DNA of 64,000 bases, from positions 124,001 through 188,000 of IMG/VR virus record IMGVR_UViG_3300011934_000017, one strand, 5' to 3'. The notes under the pieces were generated by a model, which did no database searches, was not told the DNA's origin, and saw only the letters and a program-made list of their open reading frames with translations. This document shows positions 2,348-31,625 of the stretch, one piece after another; position 1 is the stretch's first letter; every line of letters begins with the position of its first letter. A program made the position numbers and the translations under genes.

Positions 2348-2374
2348 AATTGATCACTCTGAGTAAGAATACGC

Positions 2375-2467
2375 GAACGTTAACAAGCGCCGTAACCAAA
2401 TTAACAAGCGCTCTAAGCTCTTGACTAGACGCACTTTCATTATATCATACTCATATATAGAAAGCAA
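2375..2467 (-). promoter_or_regulatory. sigma70-type promoter (TTGCTT-17-TATAAT, extended -10 TG) plus 28-bp downstream element, copy 1
   Basis: -35 at 2467-2462, -10 at 2444-2439, element AATTTGGTTACGGCGCTTGTTAACGTTC at 2402-2375. Confidence 0.85.
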
Positions 2468-4344: not shown

Positions 4345-4377
4345 AAGGATCTCCTATTGTGCTTTGCTCTTTAGGGA

Positions 4378-12921: not shown

Positions 12922-13314
12922 TTATTCGTCCCAGTCATCGTCATCGTCTTCATCTTCATCATCTTCATCATCTTCATCATCTTCATCATCTTCATCATCT
13001 TCATCTTCATCATCTTCATCGTCGTCGAGGTCTTCATCGTCGTCGAGGTCTTCGTCCTCGTCTTCGTCCTCGTCCTCTTCGTCAGCTTCATCTTCATCTT
13101 CATCTTCATCGTCATCGCCGAAGTCATCATCCTCTTCATCATCACCGGAATCATCTTCACCGTCTGGAACGGATTCGGCAACAGCGTCGGTAAGCGTGTC
13201 TAGCGTATAACCAGCAGCCTGGGCTTCGGACAATAGAGTAAGAATTGCGGAAGCAAGCAGTTCTTCCAAGTTCAGTTTTGGAGCTTTTGCTGCGGTTTTC
13301 TTTGACTTCGCCAT
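12922..13314 (-). CDS. highly acidic protein (poly-D/E C-terminal half)
   Basis: Basic N-terminus, short helix, long D/E tract built of 9-nt tandem repeats; ends DDDDWDE. Confidence 0.8.
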   Translation of the reverse strand: MAKSKKTAAKAPKLNLEELLASAILTLLSEAQAAGYTLDTLTDAVAESVPDGEDDSGDDEEDDDFGDDDEDEDEDEADEEDEDEDEDEDLDDDEDLDDDEDDEDEDDEDDEDDEDDEDDEDEDDDDDWDE

Positions 13315-13390
13315 TTTTAATTCCTCAATACTGATAAGATTTAGTCGAGCATATCGACAGATAGTTTTTACACTTTTACTTCAACTTACT

Positions 13391-17994: not shown

Positions 17995-18004
17995 GTGTCA
18001 CTAC

Positions 18005-19582
18005 TTACAGGGCGTCGTCAAAATCATCGAAGTCGTCTTCGTCTTCGTCTTCGTCTTCGTCTTCGTCTTCGTCTTCAAACTCTTCCTCGTCTTCTTCTAG
18101 GTCATCTTCGTCCTCGTCTTCAAATTCTTCTTCATCGTCTTCATCTTCAAACTCTTCCTCGTCGTCTGCTTCGTCCTCGTCTTCGTCCTCCTCTAGGTCA
18201 TCTTCAAATTCTTCTTCATCGTCGAGGTCCAGATCATCTTCTACCTCTTCTACCGTGTCTTCGATAATCTCCATGCGTACAACTTTTGCTAGATCAACCA
18301 GCTTGACCTCTTCAGTGTCGAGCACGAACAGAACAACTTTTGACTTGGCGTCGGAGAAGCCGATAACGAGGGCTTCACTGCCACGGTACTCAAGCTTGGT
18401 ACCAATGTCAACTTCATCGCCAAGCTTCGGCTCGATCACATCGTCAAAGTTTGCATCCCAGCCTTCGATGGCGCGCGCAATCTTTTTGGTGTCTAACGCA
18501 TCACCTACGATAGCTGCAATCTTTTCTAGGCGAGTATCGTCTTCAGTAGACGATTCTTCGGCTTCAGTCATTGCGGCCGCGTATGCCTCAATATCTTCTT
18601 CAGAGGCGTTGGTGGGCAACAGACCGATTTGAAGGGTCAGGCGTTCTTCGTTGTACATGCCGCCGGTAGTCGCTACGGTCAGGTCAAGACCTGTCAGGTC
18701 TTTCAAGATGTTGCCAATGTTGTCACGCACCGCGTCTTCAATCTTTTTAGTCATCGCATCGTTGAAAGTTGACACAGGCTTCAGCTTCTTGGTGTCACCG
18801 CTTGCGCCACGCTTGCGGCGCTTGATGCCAGAGCTTTCTTTATCTTCGGCAGCGGGCTGCTTGGGCTGCTTGGGTGCTTTCTTTTTGCTGTTCAAAAGTT
18901 CACGCAGCTCGGCGACTTTGACACCACGTGCTTCAGTGCGATCTTCGATCTTACCAGCATCGACCAGTGCTGTGATAAGCTCCTTGCGTGTCATCTTTTT
19001 CTCAGAAGACGCTGCAGGCTGCTTCGGCTGCTTAGGTGCTTTCTTTTTCGCGTGAAGTTCACGCAGTTCCTCGATGGACACGCCTTTGGCTACGCGACGG
19101 TTGCTAATCTTGCCAGCATCTACCAGCGCTGTAATCAGTTCTGTACGTGTCATCTTTTTCTCAGAAGAGGCAGCAGGCTGCTTCGGCTGACGTGGCTGCT
19201 TGGGCTTCTTCTTAGACAACTTTTCTACCATGCTGCGAAGTTCTGTGATGAGAATGCCTTTGGAGTCGGAGCGCTTTTCAAACTTCTTGGCTTCAACGAG
19301 GGCGGTGATGCAATCGCGGCGAGTCATCTTGCTTGCGTCATTTTTCATATCTTTATCTCCGGTTGTCTTGGGTGTAGTTGTCTTGGGTGCATCTTTTGCA
19401 GGGCTGTCGCCAAGCTGCACAAGACCACGTCCTTTCTTTTTCACGTCAGCGGCTTGCACAACGATGCCGCCTTTGGTCTTGTAAGATACGCGACCGACCT
19501 TTGCGATGCGATCTTTTGAATCGTCTGCCAGGGTGATGCTCATGCCTTCGAATGACTGGTCTGCTTTTTGACGTGTAGCCAT
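18005..19582 (-). CDS. repeat protein: three helix-loop-helix (HeH/Rho-N-like) units with PKQP linkers and an acidic tail
   Basis: KMTRxxxITALVxAxKxxxRxxxxGxxxxELR x3; ends DDFDDFDDAL; ATG at 19582 with SD GAGAG. Confidence 0.8.
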   Translation of the reverse strand: MATRQKADQSFEGMSITLADDSKDRIAKVGRVSYKTKGGIVVQAADVKKKGRGLVQLGDSPAKDAPKTTTPKTTGDKDMKNDASKMTRRDCITALVEAKKFEKRSDSKGILITELRSMVEKLSKKKPKQPRQPKQPAASSEKKMTRTELITALVDAGKISNRRVAKGVSIEELRELHAKKKAPKQPKQPAASSEKKMTRKELITALVDAGKIEDRTEARGVKVAELRELLNSKKKAPKQPKQPAAEDKESSGIKRRKRGASGDTKKLKPVSTFNDAMTKKIEDAVRDNIGNILKDLTGLDLTVATTGGMYNEERLTLQIGLLPTNASEEDIEAYAAAMTEAEESSTEDDTRLEKIAAIVGDALDTKKIARAIEGWDANFDDVIEPKLGDEVDIGTKLEYRGSEALVIGFSDAKSKVVLFVLDTEEVKLVDLAKVVRMEIIEDTVEEVEDDLDLDDEEEFEDDLEEDEDEDEADDEEEFEDEDDEEEFEDEDEDDLEEDEEEFEDEDEDEDEDEDEDDFDDFDDAL

Positions 19583-19617
19583 GATGATATCTCTCTCTGT
19601 ATTTGCTTGCTTAAATT

Positions 19618-19709
19618 GAACGTTAACTAGCACCGTAACCAAATTTCTATCTGCTCGTTTTGGCTCGCTGCTACATCTTCATTATATCACATCTACAACC
19701 GCTCTGCAA
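19618..19709 (-). promoter_or_regulatory. sigma70-type promoter plus 28-bp element, copy 2
   Basis: TTGCAG-17-TATAAT (19686-19681); element 19645-19618. Confidence 0.85.
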
Positions 19710-19797
19710 CAACTTTCTGCTGTGGTGGTGTGAGGTGTGCTGTGGTGCAGTCGAATCAAAGATTGCACGGTGAGGGGGCGCTGCCCCCTCTGGTATA

Positions 19798-20169
19798 TCA
19801 GCTTTCTAGTTCGCGTACGGTCTGTGCCACGTAGCTGTCTTCTCCGAGCAAGGTCGCTAATCTTTTCGCCAGCGCTACATGACCAGGAAAATCTTTCCAG
19901 GACTTGGTGCGACCCTCAAAGACCACATCAACGTAGGATGCCAGCGCTGAAAAGTTCTTGCGCTTGTGGCCATGCAGAGAAAAGACTTGCAGGTACGGAC
20001 CAGATACTTGGCTGTGGTTTTCGATCATTTCGAAAATGTAGCCTCGGTCCTCAACGATGATAACGTGGGTGTGCTCACCCTGATCATCAACGTCTTCCAG
20101 TTCAAACTTTTCACCGCCCTGTGCTACCAGTGCTTCTTCCATTGCTAAGATGTCGGCTAGCTGAGTCAT
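19798..20169 (-). CDS. early protein, paralog family member A
   Basis: GGEKFELE.D..G...VI / AL...VD....KSW...HVALA.RL. Confidence 0.8.
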   Translation of the reverse strand: MTQLADILAMEEALVAQGGEKFELEDVDDQGEHTHVIIVEDRGYIFEMIENHSQVSGPYLQVFSLHGHKRKNFSALASYVDVVFEGRTKSWKDFPGHVALAKRLATLLGEDSYVAQTVRELES

Positions 20170-20200
20170 GATGTTGCCTCTTCAATTTACAGTTTAGGTT

Positions 20201-20292
20201 GAACGTTAACAAGCGCCGTAACCAAATTGCGCTGCTCTCGTTTTTGCTTGGTCTTACATCTTCATTATATCACATCTGAGACCACACCACAA
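20201..20292 (-). promoter_or_regulatory. sigma70-type promoter plus 28-bp element, copy 3
   Basis: TTGTGG-17-TATAAT (20269-20264); element 20228-20201. Confidence 0.85.
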
Positions 20293-20319
20293 CGACTTTC
20301 TGCTGTGGTGTGGTGCGTA

Positions 20320-20694
20320 TTAGCGCATGTGGAGCGCTTCTTTTGCCTCGGGTACAAAATTCGCATCAGGAGCAAACTCTACCAGGCGTACAACTAGAGC
20401 CACGTGGGTGCTAGATTCTACCCACGACTTGATGCCGGGTAGCTGTGCTGGTGAGGCCCAGAGAAGATCAAGTGCCGACACCAATGAGTCAATATCATCA
20501 TAGGCATCCGTCAGTTTAAAAGTTCGTATTCTCTGGCTGTCACCGTCTGCGGACGATTCGAACAACACCGCACTGCCGTCTTTCGGAAGCAGGATCACGG
20601 CAGTATAATCACCGGTCTGATCTGGGCATTCTAGTTCGAACCGCTCACCGCCGATCTGAAGCAGTGCGTTTTCCATAGCTGTCATGAAATGCAT
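20320..20694 (-). CDS. early protein, paralog family member B
   Basis: GGERFELE.PD..G.YT.VI / LD..W...KSW...HVALV.RL. Confidence 0.8.
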   Translation of the reverse strand: MHFMTAMENALLQIGGERFELECPDQTGDYTAVILLPKDGSAVLFESSADGDSQRIRTFKLTDAYDDIDSLVSALDLLWASPAQLPGIKSWVESSTHVALVVRLVEFAPDANFVPEAKEALHMR

Positions 20695-20701
20695 GTTGTC
20701 A

Positions 20702-20798
20702 CCTCTACAAACTTTACAAGGCAGCGAACATCAACAAACGCCGTAACCAAGTTCTGCTGTGCTCGCTGAGGGGTTGGTACTACATCTTCATTATATCA
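20702..20798. repeat. 97-bp perfect direct repeat, copy 1 (RBS, 28-bp element and extended -10 promoter; promoter copy 4)
   Basis: Identical to 23922-24018; element 20753-20726, -10 at 20795-20790. Confidence 0.95.
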
Positions 20799-20825
20799 CG
20801 TCAGGAGTCAAAAGAACAGCATTTT

Positions 20826-21155
20826 CTATGAGGCGGTCTTTACAATGCTTGGTATGCTCGATTCGGGTACGATTTCTGCTAGACGTTGGGCTAACTTGAC
20901 GTGGATGGGACAGTCTAACCAGCAGCGCTTACCACTGTTTTTTGACCCCCAGAAAAGATCGACGTGCCAGGCCAGTGCTTCGAAATTGCTTCGGGATGTG
21001 GCTGCATCTTTTAAAAAGATCACCTCTTGAACGCTACAATCATCAAAATAGGTACAAGCTGTAGCTCTACCTTGACTGGCTTCTAACATGACCACGATGC
21101 AAAAATCGGAATCAATCTGCTCAAGGGCGAATCTTTCAAGGTGGTTAACGGGCAT
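20826..21155 (-). CDS. early protein, paralog family member C
   Basis: ERFALE...D / FEALA.HVD.FW...CW.D.P.HVKLA.RL. Confidence 0.75.
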   Translation of the reverse strand: MPVNHLERFALEQIDSDFCIVVMLEASQGRATACTYFDDCSVQEVIFLKDAATSRSNFEALAWHVDLFWGSKNSGKRCWLDCPIHVKLAQRLAEIVPESSIPSIVKTAS

Positions 21156-21165
21156 AATGGTTCTC

Positions 21166-21489
21166 CTAGTAGAGTAGTTTGCGAAGCGCTTTGGCGCCAG
21201 AACAAGAGGCAGTACCTAAGCCTGCCTCTAAGTGCAGGTAATGATAGAGTGCATCCCAATGAAAGGTACCTCTATCCGTTTCGGGATAGAACGCTTTAGT
21301 CGATAGAAAAGTCTGGCCGTTACTCTGAAGGTCTCCGTGAAGTACAACGACCGTACATTCTTCACTGTAGAAAACGTCTGTCTTGGGATACAAAAGCGGA
21401 CCTTCAATCGCGCTGTTTCGGAAGAGAAAGTGTGTGAAGTCAGTATCGGACTTCAAAGACTGGACTAACCTATCAATATGTTTTTGCAT
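21166..21489 (-). CDS. hypothetical protein
   Basis: 107-aa ORF in operon. Confidence 0.65.
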   Translation of the reverse strand: MQKHIDRLVQSLKSDTDFTHFLFRNSAIEGPLLYPKTDVFYSEECTVVVLHGDLQSNGQTFLSTKAFYPETDRGTFHWDALYHYLHLEAGLGTASCSGAKALRKLLY

Positions 21490-21499
21490 CTTTACATCC

Positions 21500-22255
21500 T
21501 CAGTTTTTATGTATCATGTAGTCGGCAACGATCTTGGCAGCGTCACGTCCTACAGAGTCATCATTAGCCAGATGTATATTCAGGCGTAGCATATCTTCAT
21601 GCTGTCCAAAATGTCCCCACATGTTTTCATACTCGTCTTTGGTAGGTGCACCTCGATCCAAAAAGCTTGATTGACCTCCGCTTTTCGTCAACTGACACCA
21701 GCGACCGAAAACACCTGTCTGTGACTCCAGAATAATCTCAAAGACGATCAGGCTAACGCGAATATAACGCATAGCAGGATCATTATGAAACATGACAGGT
21801 ATATCCACGTACATTCTTGAAGTGGGATGATCTTGACCTAACAGGTAAGAGTTTAGTCGCAGAGGCAGCTTCGTTCCTGGGCGCAGCGGGTGGTCAAACC
21901 AGCGTAGTGAGTGTGCGAAGTATTTATCCAGGTGTGTCTTATCGATCAGTGGGTAGAAAGGGGCACCAACTGCTTTTACAGGACGGGGCCATTCGCGGTT
22001 CTCCAAAGAGAACATCGAAGGTGCGCAAATAACATCAGGTGAATCCAGTGAGGCGACGGAATACCCGTGTGTAGAAAAGGCAGGCTTCAACCGAAGCTCG
22101 TTATACATGAAATCCAAGATCAACTTTCCACCTTCTTCGATAGTCTCACCTGCGTCTTCGAACACATACTCCATGTAGAAATAAGGAATCGAATGGCCTT
22201 CTTTACTGAGTGAGGCACCTTGAATCAAATTTTCTAAATACAAGCGGTCGTTCAT
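21500..22255 (-). CDS. hypothetical protein
   Basis: 251-aa ORF with SD GAGG. Confidence 0.7.
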   Translation of the reverse strand: MNDRLYLENLIQGASLSKEGHSIPYFYMEYVFEDAGETIEEGGKLILDFMYNELRLKPAFSTHGYSVASLDSPDVICAPSMFSLENREWPRPVKAVGAPFYPLIDKTHLDKYFAHSLRWFDHPLRPGTKLPLRLNSYLLGQDHPTSRMYVDIPVMFHNDPAMRYIRVSLIVFEIILESQTGVFGRWCQLTKSGGQSSFLDRGAPTKDEYENMWGHFGQHEDMLRLNIHLANDDSVGRDAAKIVADYMIHKN

Positions 22256-22265
22256 AATTAGTACC

Positions 22266-22532
22266 TCATTTACGGTTAGTTCTTAGGTGAACGCTGCGAT
22301 CTGGAAACGGCGGTGAAACACGTCCCAGAATCTTCACAACATAGGACATTCGTATGTTGAAAGTTCTTGACGACATAGGACACCAAACAGTAAGCTCGGC
22401 CATTCCAGAACGTGCTCCGTTTAGATTTAACATGCCAGGCGAAAGCAACAACACAGTATAATCGGGATCACCGTTGTTCCCAAGAATCTGTAGCCACGTA
22501 CCGCTCATTAAATTGTCAGTGCCTAGTTTCAT
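22266..22532 (-). CDS. hypothetical protein (start trimmed; ATGA-coupled to upstream gene)
   Basis: ATG 22532-22530 overlaps TGA 22531-22529 and has SD GGAG. Confidence 0.65.
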   Translation of the reverse strand: MKLGTDNLMSGTWLQILGNNGDPDYTVLLLSPGMLNLNGARSGMAELTVWCPMSSRTFNIRMSYVVKILGRVSPPFPDRSVHLRTNRK

Positions 22533-23080
22533 TTCTTTGCTCCAAGTTGTTTTTCCAACGACCGATAAAGCTCTTCTTTTCGCTGCTGTATTGTCAGTTC
22601 CATCTGGCAAAGTTCGTGATACTCCATAAGCGCTACAGCCTTTTCACCTATATTCAACGCGGTAGGTGACTCTCTCTCTTCGACGCGAGGTTGAGAAGCA
22701 ATCTCTTTGTGCTCGGCCAGGTGTTCTGGATTAATCACTCTACGTCCGTGTGCCAAACCGATACGATAACCATACGACGCTCTGCCGTGCATGTACTTTG
22801 GTTGAATACGACGATTGGTGCGATATACATCGGAAAGTCCTTTTCTATGTGCTTGACTCAATACCGAAGAAATGGCAGAAATAAAAGAACGTACATCGTG
22901 GCTTTCTAGGCTTTCAATCTTTATGCATTGCCGATCGAGAATGCAGAAAGCAATGTCAACCGAGGTGTAGAAAACGGACGAGTCAACATTTACCATAGCA
23001 CCGAGAGTGCCAATCACACGGGTTCTAAAACCGTAATCAAGGATATTTGAGACGCGCTTATCTGAGAATGTTTGAAACAT
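22529..23080 (-). CDS. hypothetical protein
   Basis: 183-aa ORF with SD GGAG. Confidence 0.7.
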   Translation of the reverse strand: MFQTFSDKRVSNILDYGFRTRVIGTLGAMVNVDSSVFYTSVDIAFCILDRQCIKIESLESHDVRSFISAISSVLSQAHRKGLSDVYRTNRRIQPKYMHGRASYGYRIGLAHGRRVINPEHLAEHKEIASQPRVEERESPTALNIGEKAVALMEYHELCQMELTIQQRKEELYRSLEKQLGAKK

Positions 23081-23130
23081 GATACAACTCCAAGAATAAA
23101 AGAAGTGAGGGACATCGCGCCCCTCTAGGT

Positions 23131-23421
23131 TTAACCGTACGTGAAAAGAAACGACTCGCCGTCTTTCTTGAGACGAATGGCTCGAATCAGTGGACCGAAC
23201 GAATCGCTTTCAAGATCATACCACTTACCTGCGGCAAACCCTTTGGCCTTAAAAAGATTTGTCGCTGTCTCCTCTCACGACTCAAAACTTTTTGCTATAC
23301 AAGGTAAACCATGTTCCACTCTGTGCTTGTTAGCGTGGCGGATAACGTCATGCGTCATACAGAAGCCTGACTCGTCGGACGTATCAAGCTCCGGGAAATC
23401 ATCAATCGTTAAATGAGGCAT
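23131..23421 (-). pseudogene. 96-codon frame split by one in-frame TGA (23277-23275)
   Basis: SD GGAG + ATG at 23421; MPHLTIDDFPEL...KSFES*EETATNLF...LFTYG-TAA stays in one frame. Confidence 0.55.
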
Positions 23422-23434
23422 AGTCTTTCTCCAG

Positions 23435-23455
23435 AAAAGCGGGGCCTAGCCCCGC
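23435..23455 (-). terminator. intrinsic terminator
   Basis: GCGGGGC-TAG-GCCCCGC-TTTT on the minus strand. Confidence 0.75.
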
Positions 23456-23464
23456 GAGTAGAAG

Positions 23465-23914
23465 TTAGAAACAGTTCTTGATTGCGCCCATCACTTCAGG
23501 CAAGCGACCAGTAACAAGCGAACTTTCGTACATGAATTTCGGCTGAGCACCGTTGAACACATCGTGCTCGGTGTTTTCATCTTCAATGAAGGCTAGGTAC
23601 ATATCGCTGTTGACAGAACTCTGGCCAACAGGCAAGCGACCGTGCTTGATGTTGAAGGTACCAGGCTCAACTTCTGCACCGAGCATGACAACGACTCGGC
23701 GACGATCAATAAGACCAATACTGAATCCTTCTGCAAACTCTGTATCGTGTAGTTTCACCGAAGCCACGTCCTGTTCAGACACACCAGAAAGGTCATGTGC
23801 AAACTTCGCAAGCTCGCGGCAGGCAGAAATCGAACCGGCTTTCATATCTTCACCGAGGCGTGAAATAACAGACCAGATAATACCGAGACCAGAAATTTTA
23901 TCGTATGCGTACAT
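23465..23914 (-). CDS. hypothetical early protein
   Basis: Directly behind repeat copy 2 (RBS GAGG). Confidence 0.75.
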   Translation of the reverse strand: MYAYDKISGLGIIWSVISRLGEDMKAGSISACRELAKFAHDLSGVSEQDVASVKLHDTEFAEGFSIGLIDRRRVVVMLGAEVEPGTFNIKHGRLPVGQSSVNSDMYLAFIEDENTEHDVFNGAQPKFMYESSLVTGRLPEVMGAIKNCF

Positions 23915-23921
23915 GATATAT

Positions 23922-24018
23922 CCTCTACAAACTTTACAAGGCAGCGAACATCAACAAACGCCGTAACCAAGTTCTGCTGTGCTCGCTGAGGGGTTGGTAC
24001 TACATCTTCATTATATCA
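23922..24018. repeat. 97-bp perfect direct repeat, copy 2 (promoter copy 5; -35 TTGTAT at 24038-24033)
   Basis: Identical to 20702-20798. Confidence 0.95.
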
Positions 24019-24038
24019 TACCCAGCACCTGAATACAA

Positions 24039-24314
24039 CTACTGAAGCAGGAGCTCAAGATCAGCTAGGCTGGTACCTAGAATAGCATCCTCAGAGAAAG
24101 TTGAAATAAGCCGTGCGTTATACCAATGAGCGCTGGGATGCTCGTTAGGTATCTTACGACACATCTGCGCCATTACGTACATGGCAAAGTGCGGGTATTC
24201 GTATGCTGAATAGCTTTCAGGATTATCCGGCATCTTCATACCCGAGTTGGAAGCTGCTTGAGCCAGACTGCGAATATCCATGAGGGCGTTGAAGTCTTCG
24301 GTACGCTTATTCAT
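24039..24314 (-). CDS. hypothetical protein
   Basis: ATG at 24314 with SD GGAG. Confidence 0.7.
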   Translation of the reverse strand: MNKRTEDFNALMDIRSLAQAASNSGMKMPDNPESYSAYEYPHFAMYVMAQMCRKIPNEHPSAHWYNARLISTFSEDAILGTSLADLELLLQ

Positions 24315-24582
24315 CTTCTTCTCCAATTAGTTCTTCACGTTTAGCAACACGAATGGCTTTCTTGACGGCAGCCAGCAGATCGTACAGGTCTTCGACAGGT
24401 ACTGACAAGCCTTTCGAGGTAGGTGCAAACTTTTCCATCTTCTCCGTCTTGTAGTAGCGACGAAGATCAACCATAGACTTCTCTTCAAACTCGTTTATGA
24501 CCATTCGCACCTCTGAACCTTTAGCGCTGTTCAGGCGAGCGATACGATGAACGGAGTTAGGCTTAACGTAGTTCTTAGGCAT
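24307..24582 (-). CDS. PC4/p15 (transcriptional coactivator-like) ssDNA-binding protein
   Basis: EVRMVINEFE...VDLRRYY......PTSKGLSV. Confidence 0.85.
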   Translation of the reverse strand: MPKNYVKPNSVHRIARLNSAKGSEVRMVINEFEEKSMVDLRRYYKTEKMEKFAPTSKGLSVPVEDLYDLLAAVKKAIRVAKREELIGEEDE

Positions 24583-24631
24583 GATAAAAATCCTTTGCAG
24601 AATAGCCCCGGACTGTCCGGAGCATGAGAGT

Positions 24632-24967
24632 TTATACGGAAAAGATTACGTCGTACTTGGAGAGGAGAACAGGTCCCAATTCCCAGACGTAAGCATCATA
24701 CAGGAAGTCATTGTCTTCCTGCTTGCTCCAAGTTTCTTGCTTCTCGATCCAGTCGATCATCTGATCCACAGTATCAAAGAAGGCAGCGTGAATATTCCCC
24801 CAGCCACAAGGCCACGCTTTCTTGCGATACACGCAGGCATACACAGCGGTGTCTGGCCAGATATGCCCATGAAGATCGTGGTCTTCAATGTGCGACTGAA
24901 GGGCCGATACAAACTTTTCAGGTGCAGTTGAAAATACGGTACCGGGCTGCTGAATGATGTAGGGCAT
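24632..24967 (-). CDS. hypothetical early protein
   Basis: SD GGAG; first gene behind promoter copy 6. Confidence 0.7.
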   Translation of the reverse strand: MPYIIQQPGTVFSTAPEKFVSALQSHIEDHDLHGHIWPDTAVYACVYRKKAWPCGWGNIHAAFFDTVDQMIDWIEKQETWSKQEDNDFLYDAYVWELGPVLLSKYDVIFSV

Positions 24968-24988
24968 GATGTTTCTCCAAGATACAAG

Positions 24989-25080
24989 GAACGTTAACTA
25001 ACGCCGTAACCAAATTGCGTTACGCTCGTTAGGGGCAGGTGCTACATCTTCATTATATCACAATTTAAGCTGTCCTACAA
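24989..25080 (-). promoter_or_regulatory. sigma70-type promoter plus 28-bp element, copy 6
   Basis: TTGTAG-17-TATAAT (25057-25052); element 25016-24989. Confidence 0.85.
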
Positions 25081-25106
25081 GGACTCTAATTGCTGAGGAG
25101 AATACT

Positions 25107-25583
25107 ATGCATTTCTACGATGAAATTCAAAAGAACAAACCACGCAAGGTCGAGGTAGAAAAAGCACCGACCGACGTTTTGATTCTGAAGCGGGAGTACA
25201 TGCGCGAAGGCACACACGGTACGTTTATCTTTCCCGACGGCAGCAAGCTAGACACTCTGGAGCTTCCGTGGAACGATAACAAGCAACGGGTGTCCTGCAT
25301 TCCCGAAGGAAAGTATAAGCTGAGAAAGCGTTACTCTCCTGTCGTGAAGCGATCTTCTGGAAATGAGTTCGCTAACGGGTGGGAAGTAACAAACGTAGAG
25401 AACAGGACCTACATCATGATTCACCCTGGAAACTACGTGCGCAACTTCTTAGGTTGTATTGGTGTTGGGTTGAGTAAAGGTTTCCAAGGCAACTCACCTG
25501 TCATCTGGAACAGCCGTGCAGCTTTTCGCAAGTTCATGGCTAAGATGAAAGTTCACGAAGAGTGGACGCTTATCGTAGAGTAA
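25107..25583 (+). CDS. DUF5675 family protein (putative L,D-transpeptidase-fold cell-wall enzyme)
   Basis: R......T.G......TLELPW.DN....SCIPEG.Y...R.YI.IHPGN......GCI.VG. Confidence 0.85.
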   Translation: MHFYDEIQKNKPRKVEVEKAPTDVLILKREYMREGTHGTFIFPDGSKLDTLELPWNDNKQRVSCIPEGKYKLRKRYSPVVKRSSGNEFANGWEVTNVENRTYIMIHPGNYVRNFLGCIGVGLSKGFQGNSPVIWNSRAAFRKFMAKMKVHEEWTLIVE

Positions 25584-25584
25584 C

Positions 25585-25624
25585 AAAAAGCCCCGCTATC
25601 CTTAATTGGACGCGGGGCTTTTTT
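25585..25624. terminator. bidirectional terminator between convergent genes
   Basis: AAAAAGCCCCGC...GCGGGGCTTTTTT. Confidence 0.85.
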
Positions 25625-26147
25625 ATCGGTGACGCACTCTGTTTTTGCCGCAGCGACGACAAGGTCTTGGAGCTATTGACCTGCGAATGATGTTGAGATT
25701 CTTGTTCTGTGGTGTGATGCTTGCTGTAGACTGACCGAACTTGGCAGCGTGTCTCTCCATGACTAGACTCTCATTAAACATATCCTTGTACGACCATGCT
25801 TTTTGGTGTGCAAGCTCCCATGCGGGAATATCAATAGCTTCGTCTAGTAGAGACAGTACCATTCCCCGTGGTATTACTTTCTGCGGCTTTCCCTGACCTA
25901 CCTTGAGCACTGTGCAATCATCTTCGGCAATAACAATCGGGGAATGATGCTCGATGTTATTGTTGATGATAAGGTAGTGATCTTTGCCTTCTGTGCCGGG
26001 AGAACGAAAAGCAGGAACGCGCAACCAAGAGTCTTCCCACGGTTCTTCAGTCTTTGGGTCCCAAGGCAAATTCCAAGAACGCAGAAAGACCAAGACGTAA
26101 GCGTTGAAAGTGATATTGCTGGGATTGTTGTGAACGTAGACTTCCAT
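25623..26147 (-). CDS. hypothetical protein with C-terminal CxxC
   Basis: 174-aa ORF with SD GAGG. Confidence 0.7.
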   Translation of the reverse strand: MEVYVHNNPSNITFNAYVLVFLRSWNLPWDPKTEEPWEDSWLRVPAFRSPGTEGKDHYLIINNNIEHHSPIVIAEDDCTVLKVGQGKPQKVIPRGMVLSLLDEAIDIPAWELAHQKAWSYKDMFNESLVMERHAAKFGQSTASITPQNKNLNIIRRSIAPRPCRRCGKNRVRHR

Positions 26148-26155
26148 ATAAACCT

Positions 26156-27715
26156 CTACAATGTAAGACCCGACTTCACTTTGTCCGGATTCTTCAGATA
26201 AGCCGCAACACGCTTCTGTGTGTCTTTAGCTGCGCGAGCACCAGGGTCTTTCAAGTCTTTAGTCAGACCTTCAATTTCTTTTCGTAAGGCTGCAATCTTT
26301 GTTTTCAGATCGGCTGCTTCCAACTTAGCCAGCTTACGCACCTGACGATTCAGAATGATAGTGGCGTCTGCTTCGGGCATCTTCATTGCCTTGGCCAGTG
26401 TCGCGTCAGGATTATCTGCTACCAGCACTTTAGGCAGCACCTTCAACAACTTCTCCATATTCTCAACAGCGAACAGGTAGACCTCTTGTAAGTGAAGCTC
26501 TTTCTTGGCTTTCTCAAGCAGGTTCTCAACCAACCGTAGCTCCAGAGCAATGCGATACTTGATCCAAGCACTAAAGAACTTGTCGTATCCAAGATAGTGG
26601 AAAGCATTGCGGTCATCTTCTTTTCGAACCGTGATACCAAGACGATAGCTTACTTTACTGGTAGTCTGCTTTTCTACCTTCTCTACAATATCGTAGAAGT
26701 CTTCAGTGCCGAGACCTTTCTGGCACTCAATGATAAACAAGGCGCCGTACGGGCCACTGCCTTTAGACTTCTTGCCTTGCTTGCTGTAACACTTGCGAAC
26801 ACCGTCAATGTTGCTAATCTTTTCCAGTGTCTTATCAATCTGGACAGTAGATGACAAACCAGAAGGAACGAAAGAACGGATGTATAGGGTCTTCTTATCG
26901 TAGTCCTCTTCAAACAGCGGAGCATACGTAACACTGCCTTTGCCTGTCTTTACCATTTCCTCCATGTCGGCTCTTTCAATAGACGCATCGCATCCCCAAG
27001 CGTGTTGCACCTCTAGCATAGATGCTAACTTCTTGGAGCTAATCGTCTTGCCTTTGAGCAGTGCAATAACTACCTTGGCTACGCTGCGAAACGAGAAGCT
27101 TGGGTTACCTGCGCGAACGCCGTATGCTGGCGCTGGTATGTTACCATTAAACAATGCATACGGTAGTAGTGATGGAAGAAACAGGGGAATCGTATCGTCA
27201 CCACTGAAGTTGGGAACCTTCGGCACAACCTCTAAGTAGTCACGGTCTAGCATGAAGCTATTCGTAAACTTACTCATACGTGCTTCAGTGTAACGCTGAG
27301 CAGCAGGAGGATTGATCGGTGTACCCCAGTTACCTTGACCGTCTACCGCAGGTGGCATTGTGTTTGCAATCGTAACCATCGCACCGTAAGCAGCGCTATC
27401 ACCATGCGGGTGATATTTACCGATGGTGTCACCAACAGTACGTGCAGACTTTTTATACGAGCTGGACGGACGCAAGTTAAGACCAGCTAATGACCAAAGT
27501 AATGCGCGGTGCACAGGCTTCAGACCGTCACGATAATCGGGTACCGCACGATCTTCTACAACGTAGGCACCGTAGATGCTAAGTGCTTCGGCTGTGAACT
27601 TGTCTAAGCCTTGGTCCCGTAATGTGGTGTCAGTGATACCAGGCATCGGGAAAATAGACAGGTCATCAGTCTTTGCAACTTGAGTGGTCTTTGCTTTGCG
27701 TGTTTGCTTTACCAT
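26156..27715 (-). CDS. gyrA: type IIA topoisomerase subunit A (GyrA/ParC-like), no C-terminal pinwheel
   Basis: DGLKPVHR, KKSARTVGDTIGKYHPHGD, GQGNWG, AAQRYTEARMS (catalytic Tyr). Confidence 0.95.
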   Translation of the reverse strand: MVKQTRKAKTTQVAKTDDLSIFPMPGITDTTLRDQGLDKFTAEALSIYGAYVVEDRAVPDYRDGLKPVHRALLWSLAGLNLRPSSSYKKSARTVGDTIGKYHPHGDSAAYGAMVTIANTMPPAVDGQGNWGTPINPPAAQRYTEARMSKFTNSFMLDRDYLEVVPKVPNFSGDDTIPLFLPSLLPYALFNGNIPAPAYGVRAGNPSFSFRSVAKVVIALLKGKTISSKKLASMLEVQHAWGCDASIERADMEEMVKTGKGSVTYAPLFEEDYDKKTLYIRSFVPSGLSSTVQIDKTLEKISNIDGVRKCYSKQGKKSKGSGPYGALFIIECQKGLGTEDFYDIVEKVEKQTTSKVSYRLGITVRKEDDRNAFHYLGYDKFFSAWIKYRIALELRLVENLLEKAKKELHLQEVYLFAVENMEKLLKVLPKVLVADNPDATLAKAMKMPEADATIILNRQVRKLAKLEAADLKTKIAALRKEIEGLTKDLKDPGARAAKDTQKRVAAYLKNPDKVKSGLTL

Positions 27716-27726
27716 AACAACCCCTT

Positions 27727-29772
27727 TTAATCTTTAAGACCGAGTAAGCGACGACGATAAACAGCATCTTCAGCCACAACACCGCGGAAGAAACGCTCCT
27801 GCTCTTTGTCAGCAAACGGATTGATTCGAATCATCTTACGTGTACCAGGATTGAATGCGATCGGTTCAAGGTATGTTTCATCAACTTCACCCCAACCTTT
27901 GATACGTACAATATCTTTATCTTTCACTGAGGCTGGCGCTTGTGCTCGTGCTTCTGCAAACGTCATACCGCCGTAAAGTTTGTTATTCTTTACAACTGCG
28001 TAAAGCGGAGCTTCGATACACCACACGCGGCCTTCTTTGAACATATCTGGCAACAGGCGATAGATAGCAGCTAGATACAGGACAGCAATGTGACCACCAT
28101 CTGGATCAGGGTCAACCAAAAGAATGACGTTCGCTGTGCGCAACTTTGCCGTGGACAGCGTTGGGTTCTCTGCTTTAGGGTCAAGTGTCTTTACATCAGC
28201 ACCAAGGGCCGTAAGCATCTGCTGAATTTCAGAGTGTGCCAGCACTTTAGACAACGGTGCTTTGAGAGCATTCAGCGGCTTACCACCAGCGGGAAGCACC
28301 TCTTGGTAGTCAGAGTTGCGAGCATCAATCGCGGTTCCAGCCGCGCTGTCACCCTCCACAATATAGAGTTCACGTTCACTGGGCTTGGCACGATCAGCGA
28401 CAGCAAGACCTGCAGGAAGCGCAGAGCCTTTAGTCTTCTTTTTCACATCAGCCATAGAACGCACAACAGCCGCAAGATCGGTACGACCTTTACCCATAGC
28501 CTGTGCGCGTTTAACGATGGCTTTAGCGGTCTTCTTATTTTTATCAAAATACTCTTCAATCGCAGGAAGCAAAGCATCGTAAACTTCACGGTCTACTTTC
28601 GACGCCAGCTTATCTTTTACCTGAGACGTATACTGTGCCCCATGCATTCGAAAGTCAAACAGACCTGTAAGGCCAATCAGCAGGTCAGAGCCTTTGAAGC
28701 CGAGCGCACGACCTTTACCTTTGGTAGTAGGTGTGAAGGGCTTGATTGCTTGTACGACAGCATCCGTAAAGCCTTTAACGTGCCAACCACCGTCGGCCGT
28801 GGGACTTGTATTGACAAAGCTCAAAAAGTTGTCGATATCAGGATGATCTGCCCATGTCACTGCGCAGCTAATGTAGTCGGACTTGAATGTGAATGGTTTG
28901 CCAAGCGGCGTAAGCTCTCGGCTATCACACATGGTCTTGGGAATCCATGAAAGGTCTTTCTTATTCTGAAAGACAGCACTCTTAACTTTTTCTTTGCGCA
29001 CGACTGTAAGGCGAATGACCAGACCTGGATTAAGATTAGCCATGTACTTCAACCAATCAGCAACTTTCTTTGCGTCAGGTTCTGCCTTAACAAAATTCTT
29101 GGGCAGCTTCTTTCCACGTCGTGCGGATTCTGACACTACATCTTGGTCAAGGCGACACGCGATAATAGTGCCGTACTTCTGGACTTTCTTGTCTTTCAAA
29201 AGCGCCATAACATCAGCGTCAACTTTCTTTACTTTGACAGGATGATCGCCTTTGGTGGTAATCTCACCTTGCTCGAAGCTTTGATAGACCAGATTGCCGT
29301 TGTAAGTAGACCATGCGCGTAGACTTGAACTGATAGCATTCACGGCAGCTACACCTATACCGTGTGTGCCCGCACTGGTCTTGTAGGCTTTGTCGTTGAA
29401 CTTACCGCCTGCGTGTGTGCGTGTCAGTGCAGCGGTCATGATTGTAATCTTTTCACCGCTTTTCAATTTCTTAAAGTCGGTTGGAATACCACCTGCACCA
29501 TCGGCAACAACTAACAGGTCATTATCATAGTCGATGACCACTTCGATCAGATTGTTACGACCGCTGATATGTTCGTCGTAGGAGTTGTCAACTTTTTCTT
29601 TCAGAGCACGGCGAGCCATTTCTTCACCAAGCTCACCTAGGTACATGGTAGGGTTGGCGCGGATACCTGAAAGTCCCTCCATTATTTCGAAGCCTTCTTG
29701 TGAAGCTGACTTCTTTTTAGTTTTCGAAGAGCCTGTCACGTCTACCTCTTGAACACCTTTCTTTCTGGCCAT
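27727..29772 (-). CDS. gyrB: type IIA topoisomerase subunit B (GyrB/ParE-like)
   Basis: EKVDNSYDE, DGAGGIP, HAGGKF, GTHGIGV (GHKL ATPase); EGDSAAG, DPDPDGGHI (TOPRIM); KGWGE. Confidence 0.95.
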   Translation of the reverse strand: MARKKGVQEVDVTGSSKTKKKSASQEGFEIMEGLSGIRANPTMYLGELGEEMARRALKEKVDNSYDEHISGRNNLIEVVIDYDNDLLVVADGAGGIPTDFKKLKSGEKITIMTAALTRTHAGGKFNDKAYKTSAGTHGIGVAAVNAISSSLRAWSTYNGNLVYQSFEQGEITTKGDHPVKVKKVDADVMALLKDKKVQKYGTIIACRLDQDVVSESARRGKKLPKNFVKAEPDAKKVADWLKYMANLNPGLVIRLTVVRKEKVKSAVFQNKKDLSWIPKTMCDSRELTPLGKPFTFKSDYISCAVTWADHPDIDNFLSFVNTSPTADGGWHVKGFTDAVVQAIKPFTPTTKGKGRALGFKGSDLLIGLTGLFDFRMHGAQYTSQVKDKLASKVDREVYDALLPAIEEYFDKNKKTAKAIVKRAQAMGKGRTDLAAVVRSMADVKKKTKGSALPAGLAVADRAKPSERELYIVEGDSAAGTAIDARNSDYQEVLPAGGKPLNALKAPLSKVLAHSEIQQMLTALGADVKTLDPKAENPTLSTAKLRTANVILLVDPDPDGGHIAVLYLAAIYRLLPDMFKEGRVWCIEAPLYAVVKNNKLYGGMTFAEARAQAPASVKDKDIVRIKGWGEVDETYLEPIAFNPGTRKMIRINPFADKEQERFFRGVVAEDAVYRRRLLGLKD

Positions 29773-29802
29773 AATACAATTCCTGATATCGATTGTCTTC
29801 TA

Positions 29803-29810
29803 TATTTACA
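29803..29810 (-). promoter_or_regulatory. TGTAAATA motif
   Basis: Between terminator and gyrB start. Confidence 0.6.
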
Positions 29811-29824
29811 CTAATCTCAGAAAC

Positions 29825-29855
29825 AAAAAGACCTCACAATTAAGGAGGTCTTTTT
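29825..29855. terminator. intrinsic terminator
   Basis: AAAAAGACCTC-ACAATTAAG-GAGGTCTTTTT. Confidence 0.85.
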
Positions 29856-29875
29856 GATATTGCTTTAGCGATTGA

Positions 29876-30244
29876 TCACGGTGCATAGTCCATCAGCATT
29901 TCTGCTAATGTTTCACAGTTTCGGCGAGTAAACTTCATACGCGCTTTTTTCATGTAATCCGCACAAAGATCAATAATCTCGCCTTCATCTTCTACATCTT
30001 CCATGTCTGGAAGTTCTTCACCAGTGGTCGTCTGAATACGATCCCGAACGTAGTCGTCAAGAAAGTTTGCAAACTTTTGGCGCTTACTCATTCCCATCAT
30101 CCGAGAAGAACCATAGTCTGTCTGGTTGCTGATTTCCAAAATCATTGCATCTTGTTTCTTCACGTCTCTAGGAACATTACCATCAATAGCGTTTTTGATA
30201 CATTCAGGAATATCGGAAGCGGCGGTGCTGATATAAACTTTCAT
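29876..30244 (-). CDS. hypothetical protein
   Basis: 122-aa ORF, SD GAGG; starts MKVYISTA. Confidence 0.7.
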   Translation of the reverse strand: MKVYISTAASDIPECIKNAIDGNVPRDVKKQDAMILEISNQTDYGSSRMMGMSKRQKFANFLDDYVRDRIQTTTGEELPDMEDVEDEGEIIDLCADYMKKARMKFTRRNCETLAEMLMDYAP

Positions 30245-30260
30245 AGTATAAACCTCTGAG

Positions 30261-30695
30261 TTAAGACTTTATTGAGCTAAGTAACGAAAACACATCAAGA
30301 CCGCGAAACAGATAATCAACAGGTGCTTCCCACAATATGACTCTATTGCCTCGCGTATCAATGCGCACCACGTTGAAATAAATTATGTTGTTTTCCGCAC
30401 TTAACACGATGTTGGCTATGGCGGACAACGGCCCTACAATGTCCAACTGAAGTTCAGCACCGTCTCGAAAAGAAAATCGAATACGGTATTGAGGAAACAC
30501 TGTGCGAAGATAGTCTATAAGATCAGAAGCATTTTTCTGAAACATAGGATCAACAAGAGGATTGTATTGTACGTCCGCACGATTGCGAAAGTCTTCCCGT
30601 GCGGACATATTTAAAAGAACGAGCTTATGGACGATAAACGCGCCATCTACAATGACGTTCCGCGTGTCTGGAGCTAAGCTATAAGCGCTGGTCAT
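30261..30695 (-). CDS. hypothetical protein
   Basis: SD GAGGTG; behind promoter copy 7. Confidence 0.7.
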   Translation of the reverse strand: MTSAYSLAPDTRNVIVDGAFIVHKLVLLNMSAREDFRNRADVQYNPLVDPMFQKNASDLIDYLRTVFPQYRIRFSFRDGAELQLDIVGPLSAIANIVLSAENNIIYFNVVRIDTRGNRVILWEAPVDYLFRGLDVFSLLSSIKS

Positions 30696-30710
30696 AATTC
30701 ACCTCAATCT

Positions 30711-30784
30711 AAACGTTAACTAAGTCCGTAACCAAGTTTAAAAGTTCTCTATAATGGAGCTGTCTTGCTTTTACAGTATATCAC
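30711..30784 (-). promoter_or_regulatory. extended -10 promoter (GTGATATACT) plus 28-bp element, copy 7
   Basis: -10 at 30780-30775; element 30738-30711; -35 not evident. Confidence 0.75.
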
Positions 30785-30804
30785 GTTTAGAAAGAAAAAG
30801 ATAG

Positions 30805-31617: not shown

Positions 31618-31625
31618 AGAAATAC

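What the first reader, a model, noticed from the sequence alone, without database searches (positions are those of the whole stretch)
20702..24018. Perfect 97-bp direct repeat of a whole promoter-leader-RBS cassette bracketing 3.2 kb of small early genes
Seen: 20702-20798 is identical to 23922-24018, ending just ahead of the start codons of unrelated genes. Established: in T4-type phages, repeated early-promoter cassettes (PeSL elements) drive modular shuffling and mini-circle excision of small ORFs. Inference: recombination between these copies would excise or amplify 20702-23921 (about seven ORFs), making this a plug-and-play accessory region.
Basis: partly seen in the sequence, partly recalled or inferred. 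Interest (0 to 1): 0.6.

Follow-up and report, generated by a model that had tools for sequence, protein, structure and literature searches.

The report
Two promoter cassettes made identical
Two copies of a conserved early promoter-and-leader cassette in a giant phage from a stromatolite were recently made identical by copying one over the other; they could now recombine to drop or double seven small genes, but no data show that this has happened.

Summary
Window 20702-20798 and 23922-24018 are exactly identical over 97 bp. This is the longest internal exact repeat in a 220-kb phage genome related to Pseudomonas phage PaBG, not a T4-type phage.

The genes lie on the minus strand. Read there, each copy is an extended -10 promoter (TGATATAAT), a leader of about 85 nt with a conserved box (TTGGTTACGG...), GAGG, 7 nt and ATG.

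The genome holds eight such cassettes. Related phage lineages, PaBG included, carry the same architecture. All other pairs compared are 41-73% alike.

The 3.2-kb module between the copies is old. Relatives L065 and L066/L070 have the same genes between the same two cassette positions, flanked by diverged cassettes.

So the identity is a recent, lineage-specific gene conversion, probably from the cassette ahead of g149 onto the one ahead of par124. It is not the footprint of a newly inserted module.

Across lineages, gene content and order do change at cassette borders: par gene number varies from 1 to 3, g149 from 0 to 2 copies, and the module order is swapped in one lineage.

The read-level test for excision could not be run. 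The cassette fits PeSL elements in function but lacks their terminator stem-loop.

Verdict: real, moderately interesting, a new variant of a known kind.

The parts
20702..20798 (-). Cassette P3, repeat copy 1. Extended -10 TGATATAAT at 20798-20790, leader, box TTGGTTACGGCG at 20750-20739, GAGG at 20705-20702. It drives par124. Probably the recipient of the conversion.
   Evidence: Its flanks are homologous to the flanks of P1 and P2 (alignment A1). It lacks the TTG -35 that most copies have.
23922..24018 (-). Cassette P4, repeat copy 2. Extended -10 at 24018-24010, box at 23970-23959, GAGG at 23925-23922. It drives g149. Probably the donor of the conversion.
   Evidence: It is most like the cassette at the same position in the closest relative, L065 (77%). 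TTGTAT sits 17 bp upstream of the -10.
23465..23914 (-). g149, the first gene after P4. Function unknown.
   Evidence: Homologues at 57% in L065 and at 35% and 32% (two tandem copies) in L066/L070. No homologue detected in G001.
23439..23455 (-). GC-rich hairpin followed by a T run: a terminator-like site directly after g149.
   Evidence: Absent at this place in L065 and L070.
23131..23421 (-). g99 homologue with an in-frame TGA at 23277-23275. Similarity to intact homologues continues in frame past the stop.
23107..23125 (-). Terminator-like hairpin between the g99 homologue and g183. A comparable GC-rich hairpin lies at the same junction in L065 and L001.
22529..23080 (-). g183. Function unknown. 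Conserved in all relatives that carry the module.
22266..22532 (-). g88. Function unknown.
21500..22255 (-). g251, the largest gene of the module. Function unknown.
21166..21489 (-). g107. Present or absent among lineages.
20826..21155 (-). par109, a member of the par family without a cassette of its own. It lies just upstream of P3.
20320..20694 (-). par124, driven by P3.
20177..20272 (-). Cassette P2, ahead of par123 (19798-20169).
19590..19689 (-). Cassette P1, ahead of the 525-aa protein with an acidic tail (18005-19582).
24975..25060 (-). Cassette P5, ahead of g111, the PC4-like gene and g91.
2348..2447 (-). Cassette P0.
30696..30783 (-). Cassette P6, with -10 TATACT.

Best explanation
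The two 97-bp copies are members P3 and P4 of a family of eight early promoter-leader cassettes. The host genome is a jumbo phage of about 217 kb of unique sequence, related to PaBG, from a stromatolite metagenome.

Anatomy, shown by sequence: each cassette is an extended -10 promoter (TGnTATAAT), usually with TTG 17 bp upstream. A 23-nt box, TGGTTACGsnnnTwGnTnAsGTT, starts 30-41 nt after the -10. A Shine-Dalgarno sequence and the ATG follow.

Inferred: the host sigma-70 RNA polymerase fires these promoters early in infection. The box, which keeps a fixed distance from the promoter and not from the ATG, is a cis site for a factor that controls early transcripts. Its function is unknown.

The cassette positions and the genes between them are old and shared with relatives. 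Ordinary copies are 41-73% alike.

P3 and P4 are identical because one was recently copied over the other by non-reciprocal recombination (gene conversion). The direction was probably P4 onto P3. The copied tract runs from the shared promoter block to the shared GAGG, which is where the two sites stop being alike.

Consequence, inferred: two 97-bp direct repeats 3,220 bp apart are a substrate for homologous recombination. That would delete the seven-ORF module as a circle, or duplicate it.

Over long times the same kind of exchange between cassettes plausibly accounts for the varying par copy number and for the swapped module order in one lineage.
For: Identity and anatomy.

Family:
- Eight copies in the genome, all on the gene strand; 7 of the 10 TGNTATAAT sites on that strand belong to cassettes, against 3 sites on the other strand.
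- The other pairs compared are 41-73% alike.
- Consensus of 37 cassettes from related phages, PaBG included: TG at -15/-14 in 36 of 37, and the -10 to box distance is 30-41 nt. The reversed-pattern control found nothing in any genome.

Dependence on host polymerase: no RNA polymerase beta family match in the genome while the control rang in 14 of 14 genomes, and one sigma-70-family ORF. PaBG is described with sigma factor genes (PMC7412058).

The module is old:
- L065 has g91-[cassette]-g149-g99-g183-g88-g251-g107-par109-[cassette] at 50-71% protein identity.
- L066/L070 has the same order.
- The two flanking cassettes in L066/L070 are clearly diverged (alignment A3). The Logan contig L070 runs through all four cassettes without a break.
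- The L065 cassette at the P3 position starts TGC, whereas its P4-position cassette starts TGA.

Direction: P3=P4 is most like the L065 cassette at the P4 position, 77% against 72% or less for the others. They share TCAGCGAGC, GTTCGCT and CTTGTAAAGTTTG. P3 keeps flanks homologous to those of P1 and P2.

Long-term change at cassette borders.
Against: - No reads could be examined. Neither conversion polymorphism nor deletion or circle junctions were seen.
- The L065 contig ends 16 nt into the cassette at the P3 position, so the unconverted state in the closest relative is known only for those bases.
- The margin for direction is small: 77% against 72%.
- The AAAGTTTG motif in the 3' leader also occurs in cassettes at other positions, so it does not mark the P4 position.
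- The 3' end of the tract lies in only 4-5 nt of certain homology (GAGG), unless the old P3 resembled P2 there.
- Promoter activity, the transcription start and any role of the box are inferred from sequence alone.
- A tree of the cassettes is unresolved. Within-genome similarity exceeds similarity between orthologous positions only slightly: 76% and 69% against 65%.
Confidence: 0.7

Rival explanations
1. PeSL-type mobile module. The repeats would be the footprint of a 3.2-kb cassette-plus-ORF circle that integrated by recombination at a cassette, and that still excises and amplifies as a plug-and-play unit.
For: - The direct repeats bracket seven small genes of unknown function.
- The PeSL precedent, with mini-circles shown by inverse PCR (PMC2839356).
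- In the G001 lineage the same module lies on the other side of the par gene, and this is the only local order change among 252 conserved ORF pairs.
- Gene number varies next to the cassettes.
Against: - The module sits between the same two cassette positions in L065 and L066/L070, at 32-71% protein identity, with diverged flanking cassettes. Partial contigs L073, L074 and L075 show the same order at the P3 end. So the module was not recently inserted.
- A crossover between diverged cassettes gives hybrid cassettes, not two identical ones.
- No lineage shows a clean loss or gain of the whole interval.
- No recombinase, transposase or homing nuclease family was found in the interval.
- The GC content of g149 is ordinary.
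Confidence: 0.12
2. The identity is kept by selection or by continuing conversion, because par124 and g149 must be expressed from exactly the same leader. On this view the repeat is old and actively maintained, not recent.
For: - The cassettes are much better conserved than the proteins around them. The par proteins are 30-40% alike while their cassettes are 61-73% alike.
- There are genome-specific variants of the box: TTGGTTACGG in 7 of 8 copies in this genome, against mostly GTGGTnACGG in G001. That hints at concerted evolution.
Against: - The other six cassettes of the genome work with 27-59% different sequence.
- In L066/L070 the cassettes at the two positions are diverged, and in L065 they differ at least in the -10 element.
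- The variable parts of the leader are also identical, which function does not require.
Confidence: 0.12
3. Assembly artefact: a repeat collapsed or chimerically joined by the assembler.
For: The genome comes from a metagenome, and repeats are common sites of misassembly.
Against: - Two assemblies of the phage agree at 100%.
- The ENA record name carries k127. By MEGAHIT's naming convention (my own knowledge) that is a final k-mer longer than the 97-bp repeat, so each copy would be joined to both of its flanks by words seen in reads.
- Contigs from a second run break exactly 30 nt inside the repeat on the expected sides.
- Both copies sit in sensible positions, 7 nt before an ATG.
Confidence: 0.02

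Closest known systems
PeSL (promoter-early stem-loop) cassettes of T4-type phages: RB49/phi1, T4/PST, KVP40/nt-1 (PMC2839356, PMC4122927)
   Same: - Repeated composite cassettes built round a strong sigma-70-type early promoter and ending in an SD and start codon.
- Placed ahead of small genes of unknown function in a variable early region.
- Differences in gene content and order between relatives lie at cassette borders.
- Short homologies serve as recombination substrates.
   Different: - A different phage lineage (related to PaBG, no T4 core).
- The promoter is of the extended -10 type with a weak -35 and no AT-rich upstream tract.
- No consistent terminator stem-loop is attached to the promoter.
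- The conserved extra element is a 23-nt box in the transcribed leader at a fixed distance from the -10.
- Mini-circles were not tested.
- Cassette positions are stable across several lineages.
Gene conversion and concerted evolution of dispersed repeats, for example rRNA operons or repeated regulatory elements (general knowledge)
   Same: Non-reciprocal copying makes two diverged paralogous sequences identical over exactly the stretch where they are homologous. The flanks stay different.
   Different: Here the unit is a 97-bp regulatory cassette in a virus, and only one pair of eight is homogenised.
Start-associated sequences (SAS/ESAS) of Cluster K mycobacteriophages. Recalled from memory, not checked here.
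   Same: A conserved short sequence, repeated many times per genome, sits just upstream of the start codons of a subset of genes and includes the ribosome-binding site. In the PaBG clade the box likewise runs into the SD.
   Different: - Unrelated sequence and host.
- The box here keeps its distance to the promoter, not to the ATG. In this genome it lies 25-40 nt before the SD.
- The function of both elements is unknown.
Lambda nut and HK022 put sites: promoter-proximal RNA elements that make RNA polymerase read through terminators (general knowledge)
   Same: A conserved element sits at a fixed short distance downstream of early promoters. Terminator-like hairpins lie between the promoter and downstream genes that have no promoter of their own (g183 to par109).
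   Different: - No sequence match at the conserved box positions to boxA.
- No conserved two-hairpin fold.
- No Rfam hit.
- Purely a functional analogy, untested.

Membership tests
PeSL cassettes (T4-type phages) | Strong sigma-70-type early promoter inside the repeated motif | tested here: met
   TGnTATAAT in 7 of 8 copies and TGATATACT in the eighth. TG at -15/-14 in 36 of 37 cassettes across relatives. TTG 16-18 bp upstream in 20 of 37. By sequence only; activity was not measured.
PeSL cassettes (T4-type phages) | Stable stem-loop within or next to the promoter that acts as terminator or attenuator for upstream transcription | tested here: not met
   - Only 20-47 nt separate the upstream stop codon from P4, P3 and P2, and the scan found no terminator there.
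- A hairpin in the early leader scores z below -2 in only 9 of 30 cassettes, and in none of P1-P5.
- One relative (L070, cassette at the P4 position) has a hairpin over the -35 region.
PeSL cassettes (T4-type phages) | AT-rich tract upstream of the -35 | tested here: not met
   The upstream consensus of 37 cassettes shows no conserved AT-rich tract, and the sequences upstream of P1-P5 are not AT-rich.
PeSL cassettes (T4-type phages) | Ends in the SD and start codon of the downstream gene | tested here: met
   GAGG, 7 nt, then ATG after both identical copies. The other copies are similar.
PeSL cassettes (T4-type phages) | Clustered in variable regions; insertions, deletions and replacements between relatives lie at cassette borders | tested here: met
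   - Seven of the eight cassettes lie within 28 kb.
- 4 of 8 cassettes (G000) and 6 of 8 (G001) lie in or at segments without a counterpart in the other genome.
- The only local order change among 252 conserved ORF pairs is bounded by cassettes.
- Copy numbers of par, g149 and g107 vary next to the cassettes.
- Caveat: the relatives are distant, and most unconserved segments of the genome (41 of 45) have no cassette.
PeSL cassettes (T4-type phages) | Mini-circles formed by recombination between neighbouring cassettes | not testable with these tools
Logan contigs (k=31) cannot resolve junctions across a 97-bp repeat.
PeSL cassettes (T4-type phages) | Host genome is a T4-type myovirus | tested here: not met
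   The best phage match of the topoisomerase subunit is Pseudomonas phage PaBG (Baikalvirus) at 68%. The genome is collinear with relatives of PaBG.
Rfam RNA families | Match to a curated covariance model | tested here: not met
   No relevant hit at E up to 1 in window 18000-32000.

The most novel reading that the evidence does not exclude
Phages related to PaBG carry an undescribed composite regulatory element: an extended -10 early promoter coupled at a fixed 30-41 nt to a 23-nt box, TGGTTACGsnnnTwGnTnAsGTT.

The novel reading has two parts.
- The box is the site of a phage factor that switches early transcripts, by read-through of the terminators inside the modules or by shut-off.
- The cassettes exchange sequence with one another, and through that exchange they reorder, multiply and delete the small early genes they drive. 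That would be a PeSL-like system that arose independently of the T4 lineage.

On this reading the 97-bp identity is the newest such exchange, caught before any mutation.
Probability: 0.3. Interest if true: 0.6.

Novelty: new variant of a known kind. Interest (0 to 1): 0.42.

Why it matters
If cassette-to-cassette recombination shapes the early regions of these jumbo phages, the PeSL way of shuffling accessory genes is not a T4 peculiarity. It would be a recurrent solution, arrived at with a different promoter type and a different companion element.

The identical pair gives a natural, datable conversion event. It also gives a ready test bed: one pair of PCR primers, or one read-mapping run, would measure how often a 97-bp repeat deletes or doubles 3.2 kb in a natural phage population.

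The conserved box is a defined 23-nt target for finding the factor that governs early gene expression in a phage group whose regulation has not been described. The PaBG paper mentions promoters once, and the PaBG record annotates none in the stretch examined.

Tried and rejected
- Megablast of 7 kb against phage records: no match. blastn of one cassette against phage records: only chance-level hits.
- Pattern scans for the box or cassette. The first, strict pattern found nothing in viral contigs. The promoter-plus-box pattern found only the G001 genome in viral contigs and in metagenome contigs. A loosened pattern in genome contigs gave 17 single hits in unrelated MAGs, which I take as chance.
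- The search for related loci with g251 in viral contigs: nothing.
- Rfam: nothing relevant.
- Pfam, PHROGs and PADLOC on the module proteins: no family, except a PC4-like domain and one PHROG of unknown function, both in genes outside the interval. The protein atlas gave no usable hit for g251 or g149.
- Word-based protein search: g149 and par124 found only themselves. For g149 this was a false blank, because homologues exist in L065 and L066/L070. I withdrew an earlier 'ORFan' reading.
- A conserved RNA fold for the leader. Local 5' hairpins occur in part of the PaBG clade. In other cassettes the box itself pairs with an upstream GTAAC, and in P3/P4 a 16-bp stem encloses the box. The registers differ, so no common structure could be claimed.
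- Other ideas for the box that I dropped: similarity of its 3' half to boxA (8 of 10 in this genome only, and not at the conserved positions); complementarity to 16S rRNA (6 nt only); the box as a second promoter (no -10 at a fixed distance).
- Tree of the 16 cassettes from G000 and G001: unresolved.
- Sigma-70 promoter scan: it does not list the cassettes because their -35 hexamers are weak, and it found no more sites than in shuffled sequence.
- T7-type RNA polymerase family search: no hit, but the control did not ring either, so it is uninformative.
- An earlier working idea, that P3 was the donor because its flanks are native, was reversed once L065 was found.
Full report
**1. The observation**

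Window 20702-20798 and 23922-24018 are identical at all 97 positions, and the match does not extend by one base on either side. The whole genome is one contig of 220,237 bp, of which the window is 124001-188000. Its ends repeat each other over 3,172 bp. Apart from that, the 97-bp pair is the longest exact repeat. The next are 58 bp, near the terminus, or lie in low-complexity coding repeats.

The same phage is present in an ENA assembly of run SRR3341855, from a stromatolite metagenome. That contig, named k127_128995, carries both copies in the same contexts at 100% identity. In Logan's assembly of a second run, ERR1924357, contig L013 equals window 23951-20769 and contig L011 equals window 20731-18047. 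Both end exactly 30 nt inside the repeat, which is the behaviour of a k=31 graph at a repeat with two exits. The repeat is therefore real.

**2. What the repeat is**

All genes here run on the minus strand. Read on that strand, the repeat has these parts in order:
- It starts with TGATATAAT, a perfect extended -10 element (TGnTATAAT).
- It continues with GAAGATGTAG and a leader.
- The leader contains TTGGTTACGGCG.
- It ends in GAGG.
- An ATG follows 7 nt later in both copies, par124 at 20694-20692 and g149 at 23914-23912.

The two proteins are unrelated.

The genome holds eight such cassettes, all on the gene strand. Seven are in the window, with boxes at 2388, 19631, 20214, 20739, 23959, 25002 and 30724. 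The eighth is at genome position 103,512. Seven of the ten TGNTATAAT sites on that strand belong to cassettes, and the other strand has three such sites. Among the twelve cassettes compared (seven from this window and five from G001), every pair other than P3/P4 is 41-73% identical over about 100 nt.

No RNA polymerase beta family match was found in the genome, although the control rang in 14 of 14 genomes. There is one ORF of the sigma-70 family. The PaBG paper likewise describes sigma factor genes (PMC7412058). I infer that the cassettes are early promoters read by the host polymerase. This rests on sequence only.

**3. The phage and the family of cassettes**

The topoisomerase II subunit next to the region is 68% identical to that of Pseudomonas phage PaBG (Baikalvirus) and less to Erwinia, Dickeya and Yersinia jumbo phages. 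This is not a T4-type phage.

Related contigs carry the same composite element. In 37 cassettes from these phages:
- TG stands at -15/-14 in 36.
- The distance from the end of the -10 to the box is 30-41 nt, with a median of 39.
- The box reads TGGTTACGsnnnTwGnTnAsGTT, with G1, G2, T3, A5, G7, T16 and A18 invariant.

The same pattern read backwards found nothing in any genome.

In the PaBG clade the 3' end of the box runs into the SD and the ATG follows within a few bases. In this genome and in G001 the ATG is about 40-65 nt beyond the start of the box. So the box keeps its place relative to the promoter, not relative to the start codon.

A hairpin early in the leader scores z below -2 in 9 of 30 cassettes, always with a different sequence. 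In other cassettes the box pairs with an upstream GTAAC, and in P3/P4 a 16-bp stem encloses it. I could not define one common fold. Rfam has no match. The function of the box is unknown. My best guess, at low confidence, is that it is a site on the nascent early transcript, or on the DNA just downstream of the promoter, for a factor that controls early transcription.

**4. Why two copies are identical**

The decisive evidence came from closer relatives, found through g251 and through a profile of the par family.

- **L065** (run SRR29340318). Its proteins are 50-71% identical to the window's. The order is g113, PC4-like, g91, cassette, g149, an intact g99 homologue, g184, g89, g251, g114 (the g107 homologue), g111 (the par109 homologue), cassette. 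The contig ends 16 nt into that last cassette.
- **L066/L070/L071** (runs SRR24908325, SRR24908200 and SRR24908301). The proteins are 32-66% identical. The order is PC4-like, g97, cassette, two tandem g149 homologues, then the g99, g183, g88, g251 and g107 homologues, cassette, par genes, cassette, par, cassette, and the homologue of the 525-aa protein.

So the 3.2-kb interval has sat between these two cassette positions since before these lineages split.

In L066/L070 the two flanking cassettes are clearly diverged (alignment A3). Logan's contig L070 runs through all four cassettes, so no two of them share 31 nt. In L065 the contig passes the P4-position cassette unbroken. The P3-position cassette there begins TGCTATAAT, against TGATATAAT at the P4 position.

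The perfect identity is therefore a derived state of the window's lineage. It requires copying, because a crossover between diverged cassettes gives hybrids, not two identical copies.

**5. Direction of the copying**

The shared sequence is closest to the L065 cassette at the P4 position: 77% overall and 73% without the promoter block. The figures for the others are 72/67 for P2, 72/66 for P5, 66/59 for P1, and 67/65 for the L066 cassette at the P3 position. It shares with the L065 cassette the strings TCAGCGAGC, GTTCGCT and CTTGTAAAGTTTG.

P3 has kept its own flanks:
- Upstream it aligns with the sequence upstream of P1 and P2.
- Downstream, GACAACATG resembles GCAACATCATG of P2 and GCAACACCATG of the L066 cassette at the P3 position.

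The par proteins are only 30-40% alike, so that tandem array is old.

I conclude that P4 was probably copied onto P3, with the tract ending in the shared promoter block and at the shared GAGG.

Three caveats apply. The margin is small. The AAAGTTTG motif also occurs in cassettes at other positions. The unconverted P3 of the closest relative is known for only 16 nt.

With no difference in 97 bp between the copies, the event is recent relative to the roughly 21-29% nucleotide divergence from L065.

**6. Does the region shuffle?**

Whole-genome comparison with G001 (225 kb, topoisomerase subunit 76% identical) gives 252 conserved ORF pairs in one collinear order. There is a single local order change: in G001 the par gene precedes the g99-g183-g88-g251 module, while in the window it follows. 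Each block starts with a cassette.

The window's order is shared by L065 and L066/L070. The partial contigs L073, L074 and L075 also have g251 followed by a cassette and par genes. G001's order is found only in its own lineage, which includes L067-L069.

Gene number varies at cassette borders:
- g149 has 0, 1 or 2 copies just after the P4 position.
- g107 and par109 are present or absent just before the P3 position.
- One to three par genes follow the P3 position, with one or two cassettes among them.

Of the eight cassettes, 4 in this genome and 6 in G001 lie in or at segments with no counterpart in the other genome. However, 41 of the 45 such segments in this genome have no cassette.

That condition is not met. 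But no lineage shows loss or gain of the whole P4-P3 interval either.

**7. Comparison with PeSLs**

PeSLs are defined as a strong sigma-70-type promoter with an AT-rich upstream tract, joined to a stem-loop that terminates upstream transcription, and ending in an SD and ATG. They are dense in hyperplastic regions. Recombination between them explains indels between close relatives and yields mini-circles detectable by inverse PCR (PMC2839356; PMC4122927).

Here the promoter, the SD/ATG end and the association with variable small genes are met. [quoted passage not shown] Mini-circles could not be tested. The host phage is of another lineage.

I therefore describe the element as working like a PeSL but not as a member of that family. 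The companion element, a box at a fixed distance in the leader, is specific to this group of phages.

**8. What the repeat can do now**

This part is inference. Two 97-bp direct repeats 3,220 bp apart are a substrate for homologous recombination. T4-type systems need about 50 bp or less, as cited in PMC2839356. An exchange within one molecule would release a 3,220-bp circle carrying one cassette and seven ORFs. It would leave g91-cassette-par124, a junction like that of G001, where a cassette after g82 and g146 is followed directly by par. An unequal exchange between two genomes would double the module.

Whether the deletion is viable is unknown. The module genes are conserved across lineages, which suggests they are useful. 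Within the module, terminator-like hairpins follow g149 (in the window only) and the g99 homologue (a comparable hairpin lies at that junction in L065 and L001). So g183 to par109, which have no promoter of their own, depend on read-through from P4.

**9. Limits**

No reads, no expression data and no experiment are available. The relatives are distant: the closest has about 71-79% nucleotide identity. All module proteins are of unknown function.

Noticed in passing
window 23131-23421 (-), stop at 23277-23275: The g99 homologue carries an in-frame TGA at codon 49. Similarity to the intact homologues of L001 (99 aa), L065 (97 aa) and L066/L070 (118 aa) continues in the same frame to the normal end. 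It is either a fresh nonsense mutation or a read-through site. The Logan contig from the second run is identical here.
   Followed up: partly
window 23439-23455 (-) and 23107-23125 (-): Two terminator-like GC-rich hairpins with T runs lie inside the module. The one after g149 is absent from L065 and L070. A comparable hairpin lies between g99 and g183 in L065 and L001. The genes downstream have no promoter cassette of their own.
   Followed up: partly
window 25107-25583 (+): A DUF5675 gene is the only plus-strand gene in this stretch. It sits directly upstream of cassette P5 and points the other way. It is present at the same place in L065 and L070 and has no counterpart in G001.
   Followed up: partly
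window 4370-4630, 12320-13620 and 18005-18230 (-): Several proteins end in long acidic tails built from D/E repeats, or contain K/A/G-rich repeats. These produce most of the 'direct repeat' families in the window. The 525-aa protein after P1 is one of them.
   Followed up: no
genome 1-3172 = 217066-220237; also 3016 and 3115 (outside the window): The genome has a 3,172-bp direct terminal repeat. 58-bp repeats spaced 99 bp apart lie near its inner edge.
   Followed up: no
L005 (PaBG) 6601/6671; L002 7373/7443 and 13807/13879: In PaBG and one relative some cassettes stand back to back on opposite strands, about 70 bp apart, so that two boxes flank two divergent promoters. In this window all the cassettes point the same way.
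   Followed up: no
window 20708-20718 and 23928-23938; genome 103485; L032, L038, L042, L046, L074: A second short motif, AAAGTTTGCA(C) (AAAGTTTGTAG in P3/P4), recurs between the box and the SD in a subset of cassettes from several phages. It also occurs inside the PC4-like gene and g149 on the gene strand. Its significance is unclear and may be nil.
   Followed up: partly
L065 4027-4584: In the closest relative, a 185-aa ORF without a Pfam hit lies between the two topoisomerase II subunit genes. These genes are adjacent in the window.
   Followed up: no
L070 7534-8340: In lineage L066/L070, the first gene after the P3-position cassette is a 268-aa protein. The par-family profile matches it in two stretches, so it looks like a fused tandem duplicate.
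   Followed up: no
genome 110281-113613 (outside the window): A 1,110-aa ORF matches a 640-aa ORF of G001 at 77% identity. About 1.4 kb in its middle (111118-112482) has no counterpart in G001, which may be an inserted element such as an intein.
   Followed up: no
window 5535-6551 (-): An ORF with a sigma-70 region 2 match (E 1.7e-6) is the phage's own sigma factor candidate.
   Followed up: no
L064 (PaBG record) 98072-98485: The PaBG record leaves a 414-bp gap unannotated. A cassette there is followed by GAGGTTAAGATG, so a small gene has probably been missed.
   Followed up: no
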